Below, in pieces: positions 6,021-64,000 of a stretch of DNA of 64,000 nt (the stretch's first letter is position 1; each line of letters starts with the position of its first letter). Made by a program: the position numbers and the translations under genes. The stretch lies in IMG/VR virus record IMGVR_UViG_3300034104_005687, positions 285,370 through 349,369 of that record; one strand, written 5' to 3'. Below the pieces are notes generated by a model that saw only the letters and a program-made list of their open reading frames with translations, ran no database searches and had not been told where the DNA came from.

Positions 6021-6562
6021 TGCGAGCTAATGAGTTTGTTGTTGAAGCACACGTTCCACCTATACGTGATCAGATTCGTGCTGACGTGAAAAAGAATGGT
6101 CCTGGTGAATATTTTGTGCGTGTAACTGCTGTAGACCAACTGGGATTTAGTGCCAGGCAAAAGTTTGGTCGATCGCCCGACATGGATGATCCCAACTTTG
6201 ATGTAGACTACATTGGTGCAGGCCGAGGACGTCCTGCACTTTGGTTCTACCCAGTTAACGAATATCTCAAAAACAAAGACTTGTACGCAACAGAAAATCC
6301 TTATGTTTGGCTAGTTAAACTAAAAGACACAGCTTGGCTACAACCTGCTCGTCGTGGTGATTCAGGTGTGGCTAATCCGCCGCAGGGTAAACAACGTGTG
6401 GGTATTATGCGTATGAGTAATCCTCCGGCTGCTATATTCTTCCAGCCAGGATTTGATGTTGTAGGACGTTACTATGACTATGCAGGACAACACAAGCGTC
6501 ACGGCGAAGTCAAGGGTCGTCCTGATCCTAGCTGGTTTGATCGTGTTAGAGGTCAATCATGA
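6020..6562 (+). CDS. Hypothetical protein with capsid-targeting-like N-terminus MRANEFVVE
   Basis: TAATG coupling; N-terminal motif shared with neighbours. Confidence 0.75.
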   Translation: MRANEFVVEAHVPPIRDQIRADVKKNGPGEYFVRVTAVDQLGFSARQKFGRSPDMDDPNFDVDYIGAGRGRPALWFYPVNEYLKNKDLYATENPYVWLVKLKDTAWLQPARRGDSGVANPPQGKQRVGIMRMSNPPAAIFFQPGFDVVGRYYDYAGQHKRHGEVKGRPDPSWFDRVRGQS

Positions 6563-54889: not shown

Positions 54890-55798
54890 ATGAAAAAACT
54901 TTTAACTGCTGTGGTTCTGTCCATGGCCGCACTGAGTGCAAATGCCAAAGAAACCATTCAAATCATCTATGGGTTTGGAGCCGGTGACAACAGCACCAAC
55001 TATGCTCGCAACATGGCCGCAGAAGCCAACAAAATTCAAAACAAATACAATTTTGTGTTTGACGTCAAGTCCGGCGGCGGACAAGTCGTGGCCTTTAACT
55101 ATGTGAAAAATACGTCAGGTGCAATTTTTATGACATCGGGTGCATATTGGCTGCGACCCAATTTCTATCCCACAGCAAGTTATGATGTCAACGAATTTCG
55201 CACCATCATGACACAATGCAGTGTGCCGTTTGCTGTGGCATCCAAGAAGCATGCCAACTGGGCCAGTGTGCCCAAAAATCAGCCAATTACCATTGCCACC
55301 TCGGGGCTGGGAGTGGTCAGTCATTTGACAGCATTGCAAATTCAAAAGATATATCCCAACTCCACTATTGTGCCATACAAGAGCACTTCCGAAGCATTGG
55401 TTGCCACAATGTCAGGACAAGTTGATCTTGTAGTGGGTTTTGTAGGCGACATCGAAAAATACACACAAGAAGGATTTGCTGGAAAACTAACTACCTTGGG
55501 CACCACCGGTCCCAAGTTTGTGGGCAACTATCCTAACTTGACCAGTCAGGGATTCCCTGCACCGCTGGCCAAGATGAATACTCCCTACAACTTGATGGTG
55601 CCACGATCTTTTCCTGAAGACAAAGCCAAAGAAATTCGTGAAATCTTGTTGTCGGTGGAAAACAAAAAATCAGTACGTGATGCATATGCACTGGACCATT
55701 GCCAGCCTTTCCAAGTACCTGCAAAGGATCTTGGCACCTGGTGGAACGAGCAAAATCAATACTGGTCTGGTTTGACTGTTGGCGTCAAGATTGATTAA
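54890..55798 (+). CDS. Bug/TctC substrate-binding protein
   Basis: Signal peptide, VPYKS..SGQVD. Confidence 0.8.
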   Translation: MKKLLTAVVLSMAALSANAKETIQIIYGFGAGDNSTNYARNMAAEANKIQNKYNFVFDVKSGGGQVVAFNYVKNTSGAIFMTSGAYWLRPNFYPTASYDVNEFRTIMTQCSVPFAVASKKHANWASVPKNQPITIATSGLGVVSHLTALQIQKIYPNSTIVPYKSTSEALVATMSGQVDLVVGFVGDIEKYTQEGFAGKLTTLGTTGPKFVGNYPNLTSQGFPAPLAKMNTPYNLMVPRSFPEDKAKEIREILLSVENKKSVRDAYALDHCQPFQVPAKDLGTWWNEQNQYWSGLTVGVKID

Positions 55799-55808
55799 AT
55801 AAAAGTTA

Positions 55809-56176
55809 TTGCTGTATGAAGCAAAGAGAAAAGTGTCTTGGACGGGGGTGCGAATCCCCCCAGGTCCACCAATAAGGATGATTATGAACGTTACACAAAC
55901 ATTAAAAGTTACAGGCTATCTAGTAGGTGCATACATTGCTTACAAGTTAGGTCTTGAAGTGTGGTGTGTTGTTTATGGACTGCTTTATTGATGGGCCTGA
56001 CCTAGATTCGACAGGGCAACAAGTAAATTAGTGGACAGCTCGGCAATGTGAAAGCCGTTAGGGTTGGGAGAACTCGGCCGTAGAAGCAAAAAAAGTAACC
56101 GCAAACGACTCACAGTTCGCATTGGCAGCTTGAACAAGGCTACCTAGGGTAAGACATACCTCGTAACAGAAACTCC
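55809..56176 (+). ncRNA. ssrA: Circularly permuted two-piece tmRNA, tag ANDSQFALAA; outer ends approximate
   Basis: T-arm + CAGGTCCACCA (ends 55871) precedes GGGCCTGA..GATTCGAC (55993); G3-U70 pair; tag 56101-56133. Confidence 0.9.
55884..55991 (+). CDS. 35-aa hydrophobic ORF inside the tmRNA intervening segment
   Basis: AAGGA RBS; fills the spacer almost exactly. Confidence 0.45.
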   Translation: MNVTQTLKVTGYLVGAYIAYKLGLEVWCVVYGLLY

Positions 56177-56203
56177 AAAAAGGCGTCAAAATACGCCTTT
56201 TTT
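56177..56203 (+). terminator. Intrinsic terminator
   Basis: AAAAGGCGT..ACGCCTTTTTT. Confidence 0.8.
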
Positions 56204-56278
56204 GTTGACTTAGTTAGTAAAACCACTATATACTTGTCTATGGTCGACTTTGATCATACTTTCTAAAGGAAAAATCTA

Positions 56279-58946: not shown

Positions 58947-59951
58947 GTGAACAAACTACTAGCAATTTTATTAGCCGCAGTAACGGTGTCAGCACAAGCT
59001 GCAGACATCACAGGCGCAGGCGCCACTTTCCCGTTCCCAATCTATGCCAAGTGGGCTGAAGCCTACAAGAAAGAAACAGGCATTGGGCTCAACTATCAAT
59101 CAATTGGATCATCGGGCGGCATTAGACAAATCAATTCCAGGACTGTGACGTTTGGCGCAACAGACGCACCTGTTAAGGGCGAAGATCTTGACAAGAATGG
59201 TCAAGTGCAGTTTCCGGCCATCATTGGTGGTACTGTGCCTATTGTTAACTTAGATGGTTTCAAGCCAGGCGAACTACGCATCACAGGACCTGTTATGGCT
59301 GAAGTGTTCATGGGCAACATCTCTAAATGGAATGACCCTAAACTAACAGCATTGAATCCAGGTAAGAATTTACCTAACGAACCAATCACAGTGGTTCACC
59401 GCGCTGATGGTTCAGGCACAACATTCAACTGGACTGACTATCTAAGCACAGTCAGCAAAGAGTTCAATGATAAAGTAGGAAAAGGTGCCGCAGTTAAATG
59501 GCCGGCTGCCACTTCAATTGGTGGCAAAGGCAATGAAGGTGTTGCTGCCAACGTCAACAGAGTTAAGGGCAGTATTGGTTATGTAGAGTATGCTTATGTT
59601 AAGAAAAACAACATGACGTTCCTACAACTACAAAACAAGTCAGGAAAGTATGTTAGCCCAGATGACTTAACATTTGCCGCAGCCGCAGATGGCGCCGATT
59701 GGTTCTCAGTACCTGGCATGGGATTAAGCATTGTTGATCAACGTAATCCTAATGCTTGGCCAGTGAGTTCAGCCAGTTTCATCATCATGTACAAGACTCC
59801 TGCTAACAAAGCCAATAGCGATGAAGTGTTAAAGTTCTTTGACTGGGCATTCAAGAACGGCAAGAAAGATGCTGTAGATTTAGACTACGTGCCATTGCCT
59901 GATGCTCTAACAAAGCAGATCCGTGAACGTGTTTGGACTCAGATCAAGTAA
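58947..59951 (+). CDS. pstS: Phosphate ABC transporter substrate-binding protein
   Basis: GAGATFP, YQSIGS, RADGSGTT, GYVEY. Confidence 0.97.
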   Translation: MNKLLAILLAAVTVSAQAADITGAGATFPFPIYAKWAEAYKKETGIGLNYQSIGSSGGIRQINSRTVTFGATDAPVKGEDLDKNGQVQFPAIIGGTVPIVNLDGFKPGELRITGPVMAEVFMGNISKWNDPKLTALNPGKNLPNEPITVVHRADGSGTTFNWTDYLSTVSKEFNDKVGKGAAVKWPAATSIGGKGNEGVAANVNRVKGSIGYVEYAYVKKNNMTFLQLQNKSGKYVSPDDLTFAAAADGADWFSVPGMGLSIVDQRNPNAWPVSSASFIIMYKTPANKANSDEVLKFFDWAFKNGKKDAVDLDYVPLPDALTKQIRERVWTQIK

Positions 59952-59997
59952 ATCGACCACAACGATAGAGTGGCGCTGGAACTCGTAACCAGCATGC

Positions 59998-60023
59998 AAA
60001 AAGGCTACTTTGATAGCCTTTTT
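59998..60023 (+). terminator. Intrinsic terminator
   Basis: AAAAAGGCTA..TAGCCTTTTT. Confidence 0.8.
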
Positions 60024-60025
60024 CT

Positions 60026-60207
60026 TTGACTTTTTTGTTGCAGGCATATATAATGCACTATGATGACAGCAATCGCATTCACCGTGAAAAACATACCGGC
60101 CATTTGTGAGCAGGCCTATGAGCATGATTACCCGCGAGGTCTTTGTCGTTGTAGTTAACAAAAGTACTACATTCTGCAAAGACCCGCACACTAGGCGGGT
60201 TTTTTTA
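60026..60207 (+). promoter_or_regulatory. Attenuator-like unit 1: promoter, 32-aa leader ORF (60060-60158), antiterminator, terminator
   Basis: TTGACT-17-TATAAT; 60138-60146 pairs with 60176-60184, overlapping terminator 60181-60207. Confidence 0.6.
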
Positions 60208-60311
60208 TGGCGGTAGACACAATATTCACAATTTGCTACAATAGAAACAAGTTAGGAAATACAGCAAAGTTTGCAAAGACCCTACAAATTGAAGGGCTTT
60301 TGCAAAACAAG

Positions 60312-60393
60312 TTGACCAGTAAAACACAAGATGTTATACTAGAGACTAGTTAGGAAATAGTAGATCGAGACTGTTTTCAAAGTTCGTTAAAAA
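60312..60393 (+). promoter_or_regulatory. Sigma70 promoter and boxA-like element for tRNA array
   Basis: TTGACC-17-TATACT; GTTCGTTAAAAA at 60382. Confidence 0.55.
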
Positions 60394-60429
60394 ATTCAAG
60401 TTTGTATAGTGTACTCGGGCTTGCTCGGG

Positions 60430-60696
60430 CACTATATGTAAACACATTAAGGTTACCTACACTGTTAGGGGTGAACGAAAAGGCGTTGAAGAAGTACTTC
60501 GGTACACGGCCTTGATACCCATGAAGCAGGAAGCCCGAAATAGATACCTGAGCCTATACCAAAGGCAACGAGCGGTTGAAATAGGGAACAACTTCTGGGA
60601 ATGCGACAGGCTAAACAGTAGGCTGTAATGAGAAAAAATGTAAACTAACAGGTGGTGCTGAGTTTATATCCTCCCTTAATGTTTTTTCATATAGTG
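60430..60696 (+). ncRNA. Stem-closed putative small RNA
   Basis: CACTATATG.AAACACATTAAGG pairs with CCTTAATGTTTTTTCATATAGTG. Confidence 0.5.
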
Positions 60697-60704
60697 ATTT
60701 TTTT

Positions 60705-60780
60705 GGTCTTAAAGTGTTCATGGACGCACGATGGCTTGTCACGCCATAAGAGTGGGGATCGTTACCCCCTAAGACCGCCA
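60705..60780 (+). tRNA. tRNA-Asp (GTC)
   Basis: Cloverleaf, atypical T loop, CCA. Confidence 0.82.
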
Positions 60781-60859
60781 AGTTTTGAGAGCCACATCGC
60801 CCTGATACTTCCCTCGGTAACGAGGCACTAGGTCTTGCAACCGTGGCTCTCCTCTTTTT

Positions 60860-60934
60860 GCTGGGTTCGTCTATCGGTTAGGACACAAGCCTTTCACGTT
60901 TGTAAGACGGGTTCGATTCCCGTACCCAGTACCA
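60860..60934 (+). tRNA. tRNA-Glu (TTC)
   Basis: Cloverleaf, CCA. Confidence 0.9.
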
Positions 60935-60938
60935 TTTT

Positions 60939-61024
60939 GGAGATGTAGGAAAATTGGTAACCCCAGTGGACTGTAAATCCGCCGCCTTACGGCACTACTG
61001 GTTCGACTCCAGTCGTCTCCACCA
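60939..61024 (+). tRNA. tRNA-Tyr (GTA)
   Basis: Type II cloverleaf, CCA. Confidence 0.9.
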
Positions 61025-61231
61025 ATGAACGTTCCGGGTGTCTCCGGATAGTGTGACCCACACGATGAGAAGTTGAGTGACATCAACGGGTGGTAGTCTT
61101 TGAACCCAAAGGCCGCTGGCAATGCGAGAACGGTCCCTGTCGGGAAGCGGGTGGAAGGTACGTGTGATGGGTACGATAGCGTCGTATCTTGATGTACTAC
61201 AATTACCGCCGGGGGATGCAGAGCATTTTTG

Positions 61232-61389
61232 TTTTTATAGTCAAGCATCGATACAGGTATCGTGACAGGACGCTGTCACTATTCGGGCCTAACTGTGCGA
61301 GGAACAGGTCCTGACATAACTGCTATTCGCTTGTCAGTGTTAGCTACATTGTTGACAAATCGGCATCTCTCGGTGCTTGACTATAAAAA
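61232..61389 (+). ncRNA. Stem-closed putative small RNA
   Basis: 20-bp closing stem 61232-61251 / 61370-61389. Confidence 0.5.
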
Positions 61390-61392
61390 TAT

Positions 61393-61470
61393 GTAGGGGT
61401 GGCAGAGTGGTCAAATGCAACGGATTGCAAATCCGTAAAGCCGTGAGTTCAAATCTCACTCCCTACTCCA
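61393..61470 (+). tRNA. tRNA-Cys (GCA)
   Basis: Cloverleaf, U73, CCA. Confidence 0.88.
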
Positions 61471-61557
61471 TTGATAAACACATTCACAGATCCGCCCTGT
61501 TACCTAGGGAGTCAGCGAGTAACCGCTTATGGACTGTTCAAGAGTGTGTTTTTCAAT

Positions 61558-61649
61558 GGGAGTGAGACTTGGTAGTCAGAGAGGTCTTATATACCTTTTA
61601 GCGCCAGATTAGCGTTCTTGAGAGAGTTCGATCCTCTCCACTCCTACCA
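61558..61649 (+). tRNA. Atypical tRNA with TAT anticodon and long variable arm
   Basis: GGGAGTG/CACTCCT acceptor, GAGGT-CTTATAT-ACCTT, T arm, CCA. Confidence 0.65.
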
Positions 61650-61659
61650 TAAATAATGG

Positions 61660-61735
61660 CGCAGTGTGTTAGAAGCGGTATCTGGCAAGGCTCATAACCT
61701 TGAGGTCGGGGGTTCGATTCCCTCCACTGCAACCA
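61660..61735 (+). tRNA. tRNA-fMet-like (CAT)
   Basis: C1xA72 mismatch, CCA. Confidence 0.82.
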
Positions 61736-61793
61736 ATTTGAGTCGTGTGATATAAATATCACACAAGAGCTTCTTGAGGTCAACCTCAAGAAG

Positions 61794-62004
61794 TAAATAA
61801 AGTACAATAGGACTTATGATGCAAACAATCATTCATTCACAGTTAAAATCCGCAATGTGCCCCCAGACACTGGTCTGGTCACGCGGCTTTACATCTGCGA
61901 ATAGTATTCCAGGGTCACCTGGGTCCTTTGAAGGCGAGAAGATTCTAAAAGTCTAACTCGCACAAATTCAAAAGGACCCCGGGACTAAAAACCCCGGGGT
62001 TTTT
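61794..62004 (+). promoter_or_regulatory. Attenuator-like unit 2: 46-aa leader ORF (61816-61956), antiterminator, terminator
   Basis: 61921-61932 pairs with 61967-61979, overlapping terminator 61976-62004. Confidence 0.6.
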
Positions 62005-62186
62005 CTTTTAGTGCAACGGCAACGCGAGCCGGCAACACTCTAAACTGCAAATGGGCGGCCTGTAGGATGGAGCACTTCTTCTAGTGTGAAAAATTACAGC
62101 GTATTAAAGCATTCTTTAAGAACAGGCAGCCTAAGTATTTTAGAGTGCTTTAATACACACATTCCTAAGAGTGTGTTTGAAAATTT

Positions 62187-62261
62187 GGGCTGATAGTGAT
62201 AATGGGAGCACAGTGGCTTTGCAAGCCTCGGGTCGGGGTTCGATCCCCCGTCGGTCCACCA
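62187..62261 (+). tRNA. tRNA-Ala (TGC)
   Basis: G3-U70, CCA. Confidence 0.9.
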
Positions 62262-62266
62262 AATAG

Positions 62267-62340
62267 GTATCCATAGTGTAATGGCAGCATCGCGGTCTCC
62301 AAAACCGTCAGTCTAGGTTCGAGTCCTAGTGGGTACGCCA
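62267..62340 (+). tRNA. tRNA-Trp (CCA)
   Basis: Cloverleaf, CCA. Confidence 0.9.
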
Positions 62341-62348
62341 AGTTTTGT

Positions 62349-62422
62349 TCGGGTATAGTGTAATGGTAACACCACAGACTTTGACTCTGTTATTCTAGGT
62401 TCGAGCCCTAGTACCCGTGCCA
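62349..62422 (+). tRNA. tRNA-Gln (TTG)
   Basis: Cloverleaf, CCA. Confidence 0.9.
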
Positions 62423-62430
62423 GTTTCGTT

Positions 62431-62504
62431 GCTCGGTTAGTTAAATGGTATAACGGACGCTTGATAAGCGTTTATTACAAGTTCAATTCTTGTACTGAGC
62501 ACCA
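62431..62504 (+). tRNA. tRNA-Ile (GAT)
   Basis: Cloverleaf, CCA. Confidence 0.9.
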
Positions 62505-62549
62505 ATTTTTGTAGGCGGTCACAGAGCCGTCTATAAGTAAAAAGTTCAT

Positions 62550-62639
62550 GGTGCGGTCCTATAATGGTATTAGAGCGGATTGCTAATCCGTCGCTCGGTG
62601 AAAGCCGGGTTCTGAGTTCGAGTCTCAGTCGCACCGCCA
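62550..62639 (+). tRNA. tRNA-Ser (GCT)
   Basis: Type II cloverleaf, CCA. Confidence 0.9.
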
Positions 62640-62645
62640 GAATAT

Positions 62646-62721
62646 TCCCCAGTAGCACAGCGGTAGTTGCACTTGACTGTTAATCAAGGTGTCCGTGGTT
62701 CGATCCCACGCTGGGGAGCCA
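62646..62721 (+). tRNA. tRNA-Asn (GTT)
   Basis: Cloverleaf, CCA. Confidence 0.9.
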
Positions 62722-62726
62722 AGTTT

Positions 62727-62800
62727 GCCCTATTAGTATAATGGTATTACACCTGTTTTGTAATCAGGTTACGGCAGTTCGATTCTGTCATGGGGCACCA
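62727..62800 (+). tRNA. tRNA-Thr (TGT)
   Basis: Cloverleaf, CCA. Confidence 0.9.
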
Positions 62801-62807
62801 AAACAAC

Positions 62808-62881
62808 GCGGGATTAGTTTAATGGTCAAACGAAACCTTGCCAAGGTTTAGTCAGGAGTTCGATTCTCCTATCCCGCTCCA
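62808..62881 (+). tRNA. tRNA-Gly (GCC)
   Basis: Cloverleaf, CCA. Confidence 0.9.
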
Positions 62882-62885
62882 TCTT

Positions 62886-62959
62886 GCTCCTATAGTATAA
62901 TGGTAATACACGCCCTTGGTAAGGGCGAGCCGCAAGTTCAATTCTCGCTAGGAGCACCA
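62886..62959 (+). tRNA. tRNA-Thr (GGT)
   Basis: Cloverleaf, CCA. Confidence 0.88.
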
Positions 62960-63014
62960 TTTACAAGTCTACACTCTCCCTTGACGAGCTAGGTCCCTGG
63001 ACTTTTGTTTCACT

Positions 63015-63092
63015 GCGTCTCTAGTTCAACTGGATAGAACACCGGCCTACGAAGCCGTGAGGTTGGGGATTCGAATTCCTCGGGACGCACCA
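63015..63092 (+). tRNA. tRNA-Arg (ACG)
   Basis: Cloverleaf, CCA. Confidence 0.85.
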
Positions 63093-63100
63093 AACAGCAG

Positions 63101-63129
63101 TTGACAACATTCTGTGATTGTTGTATAAT
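63101..63129 (+). promoter_or_regulatory. Consensus sigma70 promoter inside tRNA array
   Basis: TTGACA-17-TATAAT. Confidence 0.85.
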
Positions 63130-63239
63130 AATATTTTTGACACAAAGAGGTAATGACATGAAACGAGGTAAACTCTAGTGTCATCCTAGACCCCGTATGG
63201 TCCTGGATGGCACGATAAAGACAATTCTTTACGATCCAT

Positions 63240-63314
63240 CCCTTCGAGATGTTATGGTAGCATAGCGGACTCTTAATCCGACAAGCGTCAGTTCGACTCT
63301 GACCGGAGGGACCA
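63240..63314 (+). tRNA. tRNA-Lys (CTT)
   Basis: Cloverleaf with A8, CCA. Confidence 0.8.
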
Positions 63315-63317
63315 TAT

Positions 63318-63392
63318 GGGGGTATAACTTAACGGCTAAAGTAGTAGGCTTTTAACCTATTAATCAGAGTTCGATTCTCTGTGCCCCTACCA
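63318..63392 (+). tRNA. tRNA-Lys (TTT)
   Basis: Cloverleaf, CCA. Confidence 0.9.
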
Positions 63393-63474
63393 TATAAAAA
63401 CACATTACAAGCGGTATCGCTTTTCGGCAAAGCCCGTGCCAAAGTAGTCAGTCTAGGATAGTGTGTTTCTATAT

Positions 63475-63549
63475 GGTGTCCATAGTTTAGTGGTAAAACC
63501 GCGGGTTGTGATTCCGCTATCACGAGTTCGATTCTCGTTGGATACCCCA
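63475..63549 (+). tRNA. tRNA-His (GTG)
   Basis: G-1:C73, CCA. Confidence 0.9.
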
Positions 63550-63559
63550 AAATATTTTG

Positions 63560-63634
63560 GGTTGTATGACATAGACGGATGTGTACCGGCTTCATAAGCC
63601 GAGGAGGTTGGATCGATACCAACTACAACCACCA
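63560..63634 (+). tRNA. tRNA-Met (CAT)
   Basis: Cloverleaf, CCA. Confidence 0.82.
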
Positions 63635-63635
63635 A

Positions 63636-63710
63636 GGGCCTTTAGTTCAACGGATAGAATGCCATGCTTCGAACTTGGCGATGTGGGTTCGATTCCTGCA
63701 GGGCCCGCCA
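63636..63710 (+). tRNA. tRNA-Arg (TCG)
   Basis: Cloverleaf, CCA. Confidence 0.88.
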
Positions 63711-63711
63711 G

Positions 63712-63882
63712 TTAGATGTTTTCGATAAAATTCAATGCGTCTTCCATGTTGGTAAAATATCGCATGGTCAGGCGTTCGTTGTAAATATCGTTGACAAAGA
63801 TGTAGCACACAGATGCATCGTGGTTGACGGATAGGTGTATATGAGCCCATCCGTTGGCAGCAAAGAAGTCACGTTGTTGCAT
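63712..63882 (-). CDS. 56-aa hypothetical protein antisense between two tRNAs
   Basis: Minus-strand TAAATA at 63887-63892, 4 nt before ATG; fills the spacer exactly. Confidence 0.55.
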   Translation of the reverse strand: MQQRDFFAANGWAHIHLSVNHDASVCYIFVNDIYNERLTMRYFTNMEDALNFIENI

Positions 63883-63894
63883 CAAGTATTTATT

Positions 63895-63968
63895 GCGGGG
63901 TTCGTATAGTGGTAATACCTTAGCCTTCCAAGCTAAAGCGAGGGGTTCGATTCCCCTACCCCGCTCCA
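63895..63968 (+). tRNA. tRNA-Gly (TCC)
   Basis: Cloverleaf, CCA. Confidence 0.92.
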
Positions 63969-64000
63969 AAGGATTATAACATGATAATTGAAAGCACATC

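What the first reader, a model, noticed from the sequence alone, without database searches (positions are those of the whole stretch)
60430..63476. Family of long-stem-bracketed inserts between tRNAs
Seen: unrelated interiors are closed by related arms AAACACATT..A(G/A)TGT(G/T)TTT at 60430-60696, 61468-61559 and 63390-63476. There is also an empty ACACATTC/GAGTGTGT hairpin (62157-62176) and other 15-20-bp closures (61232-61389, 62101-62156). In two cases the stem pairs the upstream tRNA CCA with TGG at the next tRNA 5' end. Inference: processing stems (RNase III-like) releasing undescribed small RNAs, or a cassette format for RNA cargo.
Basis: partly seen in the sequence, partly recalled or inferred. 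Interest (0 to 1): 0.6.

Follow-up and report, generated by a model that had tools for sequence, protein, structure and literature searches.

The report
Stem-clamped small RNAs between phage tRNAs
A giant freshwater phage carries, between its tRNA genes, many small structured RNAs that are each closed by the same kind of roughly 18-base-pair stem starting at the upstream tRNA's CCA end; I found no earlier description of this arrangement, and hundreds of related phage contigs share it.

Summary
All six stems lie at the stated coordinates. The window is the end of a 349-kb IMG/VR phage contig.

- **Size of the family.** In 125 related tRNA arrays I found 97 unique inserts with a stem of at least 15 bp that starts exactly at a tRNA's CCA. 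Control CCA sites gave 14 of 5551. A pattern scan found more than 120 further contigs.
- **Consensus.** CCA|UAUAAAAACACAUU...cargo...AGUGUGUUUCUAUA|UGG.
- **Pairing acts on the RNA.** Outside one mismatch hotspot there are 168 G.U pairs against 9 A.C pairs.
- **Cargos are diverse.** The 97 inserts fall into 61 sequence clusters. Some are conserved structured RNAs: the window's 267-nt insert belongs to a family of 210-270 nt in which 30 of 44 predicted pairs show compensatory changes.
- **Context in relatives.** Related arrays also carry GOLLD, a Ro60-like protein and YrlA-like RNAs.

Best reading: these are tRNA-punctuated, stem-capped stable RNAs. The helix serves both as processing site and as end protection. 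RNase III involvement is inferred, not shown. Rfam, GenBank phages and the literature searches I ran describe nothing like it.

The parts
60214..60340 (+). Two tandem sigma-70-like promoters (60214-60242, 60312-60340) that probably drive the first part of the array.
   Evidence: Consensus scan, 10 of 12 matches each. They form a direct repeat, family D11. Similar promoters precede the first unit in L009 and L110. Activity is not shown.
60430..60696 (+). A-type RNA, 267 nt, closed by a 23-bp stem (60430-60452 / 60674-60696). It is the first unit after the promoters.
   Evidence: pair I1. nhmmer finds 17 unique hits in related arrays. In the RNAalifold consensus of 14 sequences, 30 of 44 predicted pairs show compensatory changes. 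No Rfam hit.
60781..60859 (+). B hairpin RNA, about 65 nt, with a 9-bp closing stem GAGAGCCAC/GUGGCUCUC and a U-rich tail. It lies between an atypical tRNA-Asp and tRNA-Glu. Its arms are not of the AAACACAUU type.
   Evidence: Fold z = -3.6. Homologue in L009 11203-11277. Similar units in L181 and L104.
61025..61231 (+). C1, a conserved structured region after tRNA-Tyr. It lacks the family arms.
   Evidence: 81% identity over 189 nt to L044 17067-17253. Only a weak, sub-threshold match to permuted tmRNA (20 bits).
61232..61389 (+). C2-type RNA, 158 nt, closed by a 20-bp stem (61232-61251 / 61370-61389).
   Evidence: pair I2. Fold z = -6.7. Homologue in L009 (77% identity over 164 nt). Its cargo resembles the cluster L111/L173/L200.
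61468..61559 (+). D-type RNA, 92 nt. An 18-bp stem begins at the CCA of tRNA-Cys. The core is a three-way junction with two short hairpins.
   Evidence: pair I4. z = -5.8. Eleven unique homologues lie between different tRNA pairs. The two hairpin loops stay complementary through five different sequence combinations.
62101..62156 (+). Family member with a short 26-nt cargo. Its arms UAUUAAAGCAUUCU / AGAGUGCUUUAAUA match a common arm variant.
   Evidence: pair I7. The homologous unit in L042 has a longer cargo. The arm variant UAUUAAAGCAUACU recurs.
62157..62176 (+). Empty arm hairpin ACACAUUC-CUAA-GAGUGUGU.
   Evidence: Read. A homologous empty hairpin lies at the same place in L042. Full-length empty elements exist, for example L103 1788-1826.
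63389..63477 (+). I-type RNA, 89 nt. A 19-bp stem runs from the CCA of tRNA-Lys(UUU) to the G-1/G+1 of tRNA-His. It is the closest match to the family consensus.
   Evidence: pair I3. z = -4.8. Homologous cargo at the same junction in L161.
60705..63968 (+). The tRNA array that punctuates the inserts. It has 22 tRNA or tRNA-like genes, and every one encodes its CCA end.
61976..62005 (+). Intrinsic-terminator-like hairpin with a T-run. It splits the array into sub-operons.
   Evidence: Read. The consensus scan lists this hairpin on the minus strand only. The plus-strand reading, CCCCGGG...CCCGGGG followed by TTTTTCTTTT, is mine.

Best explanation
The inserts are separate small non-coding RNAs, transcribed together with the tRNAs in polycistronic precursors. 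Each folds so that its 5' and 3' ends form one long terminal helix of 15-24 bp, most often 17-20 bp. The helix begins at the upstream tRNA's CCA, which pairs with UGG, and ends at or a few nucleotides before the next tRNA.

I propose two jobs for this helix. First, it marks the unit for excision. RNase P cuts at the downstream tRNA, and a double-strand-specific endonuclease, most plausibly host RNase III, has to open the helix so that the upstream tRNA's CCA end can be matured. Second, what remains of the helix leaves the released RNA with both ends base-paired, so exonucleases cannot easily attack it.

The arm sequence is conserved and its register is fixed relative to the CCA. That points to a shared determinant for processing or protein binding. 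The interior is free to carry very different cargos: A-type and D-type structured RNAs, tRNA-like folds, or nothing at all.

Shown here: the anatomy, conservation of pairing at the RNA level, the register relative to tRNA ends, the diversity of cargos, and covariation in two cargo families. Inferred: transcription, the identity of the nucleases, the stability of the products, and any function of the cargos.
For: 1. Anatomy and enrichment. 97 unique stems of at least 15 bp start exactly at a tRNA CCA. Control CCA sites give 14 of 5551. The 3' arm ends at -2 relative to the next tRNA (32 cases) or 4-13 nt upstream of it (about 30 cases).
2. Selection on the RNA in the tRNA sense. There are 169 G.U/U.G pairs and 40 A.C/C.A pairs, and 31 of the 40 lie at one hotspot, position 8. 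Elsewhere the count is 168 against 9. Most stem positions show 3-6 different pair types.
3. The arm consensus keeps a fixed register from the CCA: a mismatch at position 8, AAACACAUU at positions 9-17, and a U.G wobble at position 16 in 39 of 97 stems.
4. The stems occur without cargo, for example window 62157-62176 and L103. The helix is therefore a unit in its own right.
5. Cargos are real RNAs in at least two families: A-type, with 30 of 44 pairs showing compensatory changes, and D-type, with 45 invariant columns and loops that stay complementary.
6. Every tRNA encodes CCA. In a precursor whose CCA is held in a stable duplex, single-strand nucleases cannot reach the 3' end. This last step is reasoning from established E. 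coli tRNA 3'-end maturation and is my own knowledge.
7. Precedent: T4 transcribes two stable RNAs of unknown role from its tRNA region (PMC3014915).
Against: - There are no expression or RNA-end data.
- No RNase III gene is seen in the window, or among the roughly 30 most common array-linked protein clusters. The nuclease would therefore have to come from the host.
- Stems of 15-18 bp are at the short end for E. coli RNase III substrates (own knowledge).
- Where TGG overlaps G1G2 of the next tRNA, the last pairs compete with that tRNA's own acceptor stem.
- Many cargos at one junction are unalignable. Most interiors could therefore be neutral filler rather than functional RNAs.
- A different conserved-stem family, the YrlA-like RNAs, coexists in related arrays. 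So a protein-binding role for conserved stems has a precedent in these same phages.
Confidence: 0.5

Rival explanations
1. The conserved stem is a protein-binding handle, as in Y RNAs. The inserts would be Y-RNA-like partners of the phage Ro60-like protein or another RNA-binding protein. The variable interior would tether or gate other factors.
For: - At least 14 related loci encode a Ro60-like protein close to or inside their tRNA arrays. Its top 13 Foldseek hits are all Ro60/TROVE proteins, with E from 5e-9 to 9e-6.
- In L190 and L153 a family element lies directly downstream of that gene.
- The general plan matches Y RNAs: a long terminal stem of conserved sequence plus a variable interior (PMC4201824, PMC12135203).
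- A T-loop motif is enriched in the cargos, 9 of 97 against 0.26 expected.
Against: - The RNA directly upstream of the Ro60-like gene is a different family, UAGGAUAC..ACAGCAAA...GUAUCCUG. In its long members the T-arm and D-arm are in the YrlA order. That family is the more likely Ro partner.
- The Y-RNA motif GNCGAAN0-1G is not enriched in family cargos (3 of 97 against 3.6 expected).
- No Ro60-like gene lies in the 64-kb window.
- The T-arm-like hairpins sit against the 3' strand of the closing stem. That is the acceptor-stem position, not the YrlA topology.
Confidence: 0.15
2. The arms are DNA-level inverted repeats of a small mobile or recombining element, like a MITE or a cassette. The conserved arms would serve as recombination or endonuclease sites that shuffle cargos and tRNAs between phages.
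For: - One junction holds many different cargos, and one cargo lies between many different tRNA pairs.
- Empty elements exist.
- An uninterrupted junction, CCATATGG between the two tRNA-Lys genes, is itself a palindrome.
- HNH and GIY-YIG (SegE-like) homing endonucleases are common in these arrays.
Against: - The excess of G.U over A.C pairs is strand-specific, 168 against 9 outside position 8. Decay of DNA repeats does not predict this.
- Pairing is maintained through compensatory changes.
- No target-site duplication is apparent in the elements I read (not tested systematically), and no transposase lies next to the elements.
- Arms within one genome are no more alike than arms between genomes (0.54 against 0.56, p = 0.76). 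Recent transposition or gene conversion would predict otherwise.
- Recombination through the conserved arms may still occur as a by-product.
Confidence: 0.12
3. The stems are only folding insulators or spacers that keep neighbouring tRNAs from misfolding. The interiors would be neutral filler with no released product.
For: - Most cargos are singletons: 61 clusters among 97 elements.
- Cargos are unalignable at orthologous junctions.
- Empty hairpins exist.
Against: - Most tRNA junctions in the same arrays manage with 1-10 nt spacers.
- Arm sequence, not just pairing, is conserved in a fixed register.
- Several cargos are conserved and show covariation.
Confidence: 0.1

Closest known systems
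Phage T4 stable RNAs RNAC and RNAD (species 1 and 2) in the T4 tRNA cluster
   Same: They are non-tRNA small RNAs encoded within a phage tRNA gene cluster, next to tRNAs, and their role is unknown (PMC3014915; annotation). rnaC has a T-arm-like hairpin near its 3' end and rnaD ends in CCA. This resembles the tRNA-like cargos and CCA-ending neighbours seen here.
   Different: The predicted folds of T4 rnaC and rnaD have no 17-20-bp terminal helix, and their ends do not pair with a tRNA's CCA. A blastn search of the GenBank phage collection, which should include T4-type phages, returned no credible match to the window's inserts. T4 has two such RNAs; these arrays have many, with a shared arm.
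RNase III processing stems (bacterial rRNA operons; T7 early transcripts)
   Same: A long helix forms between the sequences flanking the RNA to be released, within a polycistronic precursor that also holds tRNAs. The stem length is close to two helical turns. A localised internal mismatch is present, as in T7 sites (own knowledge).
   Different: Cleavage is untested. The arm sequence is conserved across unrelated cargos and kept in register with a tRNA CCA end, which is not a known feature of RNase III sites. Many of the stems are shorter than 20 bp.
Y RNAs / YrlA with Ro60 (bacterial and phage)
   Same: Both are small RNAs whose 5' and 3' ends form a long stem of conserved sequence around a variable interior. 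Several paralogues occur per genome. Some carry tRNA-like modules. Phage versions are known (PMC4201824, PMC12135203). Relatives of this phage encode a Ro60-like protein.
   Different: The GNCGAAN0-1G motif is not enriched. A separate YrlA-like family with a different stem occupies the position next to the Ro60-like gene. The tRNA-like cargos put the long stem in the acceptor-stem position, not the anticodon-stem position.
GOLLD and ROOL large RNAs of phage tRNA islands
   Same: They too are non-coding RNAs of unknown function located in phage tRNA islands (10.1101/2024.12.08.627333). GOLLD itself is present in related arrays, L106 and L110, and is directly followed by a family element. The window's A-type RNA shares a 27-nt stretch with the region upstream of the Rfam GOLLD match.
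   Different: No insert in the window reaches any Rfam model. The inserts are 40-270 nt, not 400-800 nt. The shared feature here is the closing stem, not the interior.
tRNA-punctuated release of other RNAs (mitochondrial tRNA punctuation; MHV68 tRNA-pre-miRNA transcripts)
   Same: Flanking tRNAs supply RNase P and 3'-end processing sites that define the ends of a neighbouring non-tRNA RNA or hairpin (own knowledge).
   Different: Those systems do not pair the tRNA's CCA into the neighbouring hairpin and do not share a conserved clamp sequence. They belong to a different domain of life and use different enzymes.

Membership tests
Y RNA / YrlA | Long stem formed by pairing of the 5' and 3' ends, enclosing a large internal loop or module | tested here: met
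Y RNA / YrlA | Conserved GNCGAAN0-1G motif in the interior (PMC4201824) | tested here: not met
   3 of 97 cargos against 3.6 expected by shuffling.
Y RNA / YrlA | tRNA-like domain in YrlA order: T-arm, closed acceptor-like hairpin, D-arm | tested here: not met
   The T-loop motif is enriched (9 of 97 against 0.26), but it always abuts the 3' strand of the closing stem. None of the nine T-loop-bearing cargos listed is from the window. The YrlA order is seen instead in the separate GGAUAC-stem family.
Y RNA / YrlA | Encoded next to a Ro60 orthologue | tested here: inconclusive
   No Ro60-like gene lies in the window, but only 64 of 349 kb are visible. In L190 and L153 a family element lies just downstream of the Ro60-like gene.
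Y RNA / YrlA | Bound by Ro60 | not testable with these tools
   Needs pull-down or gel-shift experiments.
RNase III processing stem | Double-stranded helix of about two turns formed by the sequences flanking the released RNA | tested here: met
   Stems are 15-30 bp, most often 17-20 bp. In the D-type the helix continues coaxially by a further 7 bp.
RNase III processing stem | Staggered cleavage by RNase III in vivo or in vitro | not testable with these tools
   No RNA-end data are available.
T4-type stable RNAs of tRNA clusters (RNAC/RNAD) | Non-tRNA RNA gene inside a phage tRNA cluster, on the tRNA strand | tested here: met
T4-type stable RNAs of tRNA clusters (RNAC/RNAD) | Sequence or structural homology to T4 rnaC or rnaD | tested here: not met
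   A blastn search of the GenBank phage collection gave no credible hit. The predicted T4 RNA folds lack the long terminal helix.
GOLLD (RF02032) | Match to the Rfam covariance model | tested here: not met
   There is no GOLLD hit in the window at gathering score or at E up to 1. GOLLD is found in relatives L106 and L110.
MITE-like inverted-repeat element | DNA-level terminal inverted repeats that decay equally on both strands, plus a target-site duplication | tested here: not met
   The G.U excess is strand-specific, 168 against 9. No duplication is apparent in the elements I read, though this was not tested systematically. Arms within one genome are no more alike than arms between genomes.

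The most novel reading that the evidence does not exclude
The conserved 18-bp clamp is a general display scaffold. A phage or host factor would recognise the clamp, while the interior evolves fast or is swapped between phages to present diverse RNA modules: aptamer-like, tRNA-like or GOLLD-related. These modules would act as decoys or regulators in phage-host conflict. This would make the tRNA islands of freshwater giant phages a library of exchangeable functional RNA cassettes.
Probability: 0.15. Interest if true: 0.85.

Novelty: new variant of a known kind. Interest (0 to 1): 0.68.

Why it matters
Phage tRNA islands are already known to hold enigmatic RNAs: the T4 RNAs RNAC and RNAD, GOLLD, ROOL and Y RNAs. 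This finding adds a common architectural rule, a conserved clamp helix that starts at a tRNA's CCA. The rule marks well over a hundred unique small RNAs in uncultured freshwater phages and offers a simple way to find more.

It also yields at least two new structured RNA families with covariation support. The A-type is 210-270 nt. The D-type has a core of about 55 nt.

The finding makes a concrete question testable: how is a tRNA 3' end matured when its CCA is locked in a duplex, and what are the released RNAs for? If the clamp is a recognition handle, it could also serve as a portable tag for expressing stable RNAs.

Tried and rejected
- **Rfam.** I searched the window at gathering score, and 59900-64000 at E up to 1. 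No insert matched. The only matches were tRNAs, the tmRNA at 55.8 kb and chance hits.
- **GenBank phages.** Distant blastn with the whole array and with the two inserts at 60430-60696 (A-type) and 61468-61559 (D-type) found only tRNA matches or chance 24-26-nt hits. No cultured relative exists in that collection.
- **PstS as anchor.** It gave 80 loci, but only three had a tRNA array nearby. PstS moves between genomic contexts.
- **Exact D-type core pattern.** It found only 3 contigs and was too strict.
- **tRNA-Tyr anchor.** A conserved 36-mer of tRNA-Tyr worked and retrieved 118 stretches.
- **Within-genome homogenisation of arms.** Rejected: 0.54 against 0.56, p = 0.76.
- **Y-RNA motif enrichment.** Rejected.
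- **RNA-processing enzymes.** I looked among 30 window ORFs and the roughly 30 most common array-linked protein clusters. I found no RNase III, RNA ligase or CCA-adding enzyme. I did find a Ro60-like protein, HNH and GIY-YIG endonucleases, a TadA-like deaminase, an RF-1-domain protein and an RNA polymerase omega-like protein.
- **Loop-loop pairing in the D-type.** Support is only moderate: cognate loops pair over a mean of 4.0 bp, non-cognate loops over 2.8 bp. I treat it as a lead.
- **Sequence search for the Ro60-like protein.** phmmer against PDB sequences found nothing. Only the fold comparison did.
- **One wasted search.** A literature search with the word 'TROVE' returned irrelevant papers.
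- **Covariance model for the A-type.** Not attempted, because a model of that length would probably exceed the calibration limit. I used nhmmer and RNAalifold instead.


Full report
**What the window is.** The window is the last 64 kb of the IMG/VR contig IMGVR_UViG_3300034104_005687, which is 349,369 bp long (locus L001 is the window itself). It encodes a family B DNA polymerase, B12-radical SAM enzymes, a porin, PstS, TctC-type binding proteins and other host-like genes. It also carries a permuted, betaproteobacterial-type tmRNA at 55759-56224. From 60705 to the end of the window runs an array of 22 tRNA or tRNA-like genes on the plus strand, and all of them encode CCA. No cultured phage in GenBank is related at the DNA level.

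**Checking the observation.**
- 60430-60452 / 60674-60696, 23 nt;
- 61468-61485 / 61542-61559, 18 nt;
- 63389-63407 / 63459-63477, 19 nt;
- 61232-61251 / 61370-61389, 20 nt;
- 62101-62115 / 62142-62156, 15 nt.

The empty hairpin lies at 62157-62176. The folds are far more stable than dinucleotide shuffles, with z between -4.8 and -6.7 for the three compact inserts. None of the inserts matches any Rfam family, even at E up to 1.

**Finding relatives.** PstS retrieved 80 loci, but only three had arrays nearby. A 36-nt stretch of tRNA-Tyr that is identical in four arrays retrieved 118 further IMG/VR stretches. In the 125 loci with at least three tRNAs there are 792 unique gaps of 20-600 nt between tRNAs. 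Of these, 74 close with a terminal duplex of -20 kcal/mol or better. When 5' and 3' ends are paired at random, none reaches that value.

**The rule.** The listing shows a consistent pattern. The 5' arm begins with the upstream tRNA's CCA. The 3' arm ends in UGG. The consensus is CCAUAUAAAAACACAUU...AGUGUGUUUCUAUAUGG.

A scan anchored on tRNA CCA ends gives 97 unique elements with at least 15 pairs and at most 2 mismatches. The same test gives 14 of 5551 for CCA sites outside the arrays.

The UGG either overlaps the first two G of the next tRNA (32 cases) or lies 4-13 nt upstream of it (about 30 cases). In the remaining cases more material follows before the next tRNA. The CCA:UGG pairing is therefore a property of the element and not an accident of tRNA 5' ends. 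First-in-operon members that have no upstream tRNA carry the same arms with CUA/UAG in place of CCA/UGG.

**RNA or DNA?** Across the 97 stems there are 1628 Watson-Crick pairs, 169 G.U or U.G pairs and 40 A.C or C.A oppositions. Of those 40, 31 lie at one position: position 8, counted from the first C of CCA, which is unpaired in 39 of 97 stems. Elsewhere the count is 168 wobble pairs against 9 A.C.

An A.C opposition on this strand would be a G.U pair on the other strand. The asymmetry therefore shows that pairing is selected on the tRNA-sense transcript. Most stem positions show three to six different pair types. That set was selected for pairing, so the informative point is the variety of pair types, not the 96% paired fraction.

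The conserved bases keep a fixed register from the CCA: A9-A11, C12, A13, C14, A15, then a U.G wobble at position 16 in 39 of 97 stems.

**Cargos.** The interiors fall into 61 sequence clusters among the 97 elements. Total element length ranges from 38 to 306 nt in this set. Empty elements of 38-39 nt exist.

At one junction, tRNA-Lys(UUU) to tRNA-Met(CAU), eleven phages have the same arms around eleven unalignable interiors. Conversely, the D-type cargo of window 61468-61559 occurs in eleven unique copies between at least five different tRNA pairs. Its 55-nt core has 45 invariant columns. It also has two hairpin loops that stay mutually complementary through five sequence combinations: GUUAC/GUAAC, UAGU/ACUA, CUAG/CUAG, GUCC/GGAC and CGG/CCG. 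That support is moderate.

The 267-nt insert at 60430-60696 belongs to a family of 210-270 nt with 17 unique nhmmer hits. In an RNAalifold consensus of 14 sequences, 30 of 44 predicted pairs show compensatory changes, including two internal hairpins and two long-range helices. The insert at 61232-61389 has homologues in L009 and in a three-member cluster.

A T-loop-like motif is enriched in the cargos, 9 of 97 against 0.26 expected. It always lies next to the 3' arm, so some cargos look like tRNAs with a greatly extended acceptor stem.

**Wider context in relatives.**
- Related arrays contain GOLLD RNA in L106 and L110. A family element follows it directly.
- The window's A-type RNA shares a 27-nt stretch with the region upstream of the Rfam GOLLD match.
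- At least 14 loci encode a protein of 470-490 aa (Pfam DUF2828/DUF7788, with a DxSGSM motif) inside or beside the array. Its AlphaFold model (mean pLDDT 71) matches Ro60/TROVE structures over its full length. The top 13 Foldseek hits are all Ro60 (E from 5e-9 to 9e-6) and include the Ro60 of Thermus phage phiLo.
- Directly upstream of this gene lies an RNA of a second stem family, UAGGAUACnnACAGCAAA...GUAUCCUGUUUU, with 34 unique members. Its long members have a T-arm, a closed hairpin and a D-arm in the order described for YrlA (PMC4201824).
- The AAACACAUU family is therefore not the obvious Ro partner, although one of its members lies just downstream of the gene in L190 and L153.
- The Y-RNA motif GNCGAAN0-1G is not enriched in family cargos.

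**Spread.** Of the 115 new loci, 114 carry tRNAs, with a median of 14. In 185,579 species genomes the same pattern occurs only five times. All five are on freshwater-type MAG or genome-bin contigs of 14 kb or less: two in a Polynucleobacter MAG, one in a Planktophila MAG and two on one contig of a gammaproteobacterial bin. These look like mis-binned phage fragments. Together with the beta-type tmRNA and the TctC genes, they weakly suggest a freshwater betaproteobacterial host.

**Mechanism.** The anatomy supports a tRNA-punctuated precursor. Sigma-70-like promoters lie at 60214-60242, 60312-60340 and 63101-63129, and a terminator-like hairpin at 61976-62005 (and reading).

RNase P would cut at each downstream tRNA. 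The upstream tRNA's CCA, however, is buried in a stable duplex whose 3' end would then be flush or recessed. From what is established for E. coli tRNA 3' maturation (own knowledge), single-strand-specific RNase E and the trimming exonucleases could not reach it. A double-strand-specific cut, most simply by host RNase III, would free both the tRNA and a stem-capped RNA.

The fixed-register mismatch at position 8 could mark that site; this is inference. No nuclease is identified. No RNase III gene appears in the window or among the common array-linked proteins.

Arms within one genome are no more alike than arms between genomes. This argues against recent transposition or gene conversion and for a constraint shared across the whole phage group.

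**Comparison with known systems.**
- T4 transcribes RNAC and RNAD from its tRNA region, and their roles are unknown (PMC3014915). Their predicted folds lack a long terminal helix.
- GOLLD and ROOL are known residents of phage tRNA islands (10.1101/2024.12.08.627333).
- Y RNAs share the plan of a conserved stem with a variable interior, but they fail two membership tests here.
- RNase III processing stems share the geometry, but cleavage is untested.

I found no description of a conserved clamp helix that starts at a tRNA CCA end and brackets diverse cargos. I searched Rfam, GenBank phages and the literature. I therefore rate it a new variant of a known kind, namely non-tRNA stable RNAs in phage tRNA clusters with processing stems.

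Noticed in passing
window 61558-61649: A 92-nt tRNA-like gene with anticodon UAU and a long variable arm, so it has class II shape. ARAGORN calls it tRNA-Ile. Rfam scores it only as a weak tRNA-Sec match (29.9 bits, below threshold). ARAGORN also calls tRNA-Ile(tat) genes in L081 (92 nt), L112, L115 and L173. A long-arm tRNA that reads AUA is unusual and might carry a non-Ile identity.
   Followed up: partly
L190:7978-9456 and at least 13 other related loci (not in the window): A protein encoded within or beside the tRNA arrays (Pfam DUF2828/DUF7788) folds as a Ro60/TROVE plus vWA ring protein. Pfam's TROVE model does not detect it.
   Followed up: yes
for example L153 (oriented) 6444-6557, L200 3839-3955, L088 8719-8827: A second family of stem-closed RNAs, UAGGAUACnnACAGCAAA...GUAUCCUGUUUU, with 34 unique members. 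The long members have a T-arm, a closed hairpin and a D-arm in YrlA order and lie directly upstream of the Ro60-like gene. They are probably the phage's Y RNAs. No member is visible in the window.
   Followed up: partly
L106 6249-6711; L110 407-872 (minus strand): GOLLD RNA (Rfam, 197-220 bits) lies inside related tRNA arrays with a tRNA-Lys embedded in it. It is preceded by a conserved stem-closed RNA of about 125 nt and followed by a family element.
   Followed up: partly
window 60637-60663, compared with L106 about 6060-6090: The A-type RNA shares a 27-nt stretch (core AGUAACAGGUGGUGCUGA, 89% identity) with the region 5' of the Rfam GOLLD match. This may be a shared structural module.
   Followed up: no
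window 60026-60208: A self-contained unit lies between PstS and the array. It has a near-consensus promoter (60026-60054), a leaderless ORF of about 32 codons (MMTAIAFTVKNIP...) and an intrinsic terminator near 60180-60208. L009 has a similar small ORF.
   Followed up: no
window 63101-63178: A perfect sigma-70 promoter (TTGACA, 17 nt, TATAAT) is followed by a ribosome-binding site and a 6-codon mini-ORF, MKRGKL (63158-63178), with two Lys codons. It sits just upstream of the two tRNA-Lys genes. L042 has MKRSSAKL at the same place. It may be a leader peptide.
   Followed up: no
window 55759-56224: A phage-encoded permuted (two-piece) tmRNA of betaproteobacterial type, with tag ANDSQFALAA. Several PstS-linked relatives carry one too.
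   Followed up: no
window 60705-60780 and 63560-63631: Two atypical tRNAs. A tRNA-Asp(GUC) with T-loop AUCGUUA is found by ARAGORN but not by Rfam, and is conserved in L009. A CAU-anticodon tRNA is found by Rfam (47 bits) but missed by ARAGORN.
   Followed up: no
window 61025-61231: A conserved 207-nt structured region after tRNA-Tyr, 81% identical to L044 17067-17253. It lacks the family arms and gives only a 20-bit match to permuted tmRNA.
   Followed up: partly
related loci (representatives L104:10226-10528, L119:522-1106, L058:3215-3718, L097:6528-6941, L121:8807-9616): Genes that recur inside or beside the arrays: an RNA polymerase omega (Rpb6)-like protein in 23 loci, HNH endonucleases in 17 and 13 loci, a TadA-like deaminase in 10, an RF-1-domain protein in 7, and a SegE-like GIY-YIG endonuclease in 6.
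   Followed up: partly
L204, L244, L205, L248, L267, L297, L302 (upstream of family elements): Several non-tRNA RNAs that precede family elements also end in NCCA. For example, one ends ...CAGCAACACUGACACCA. They may have tRNA-like 3' ends.
   Followed up: no
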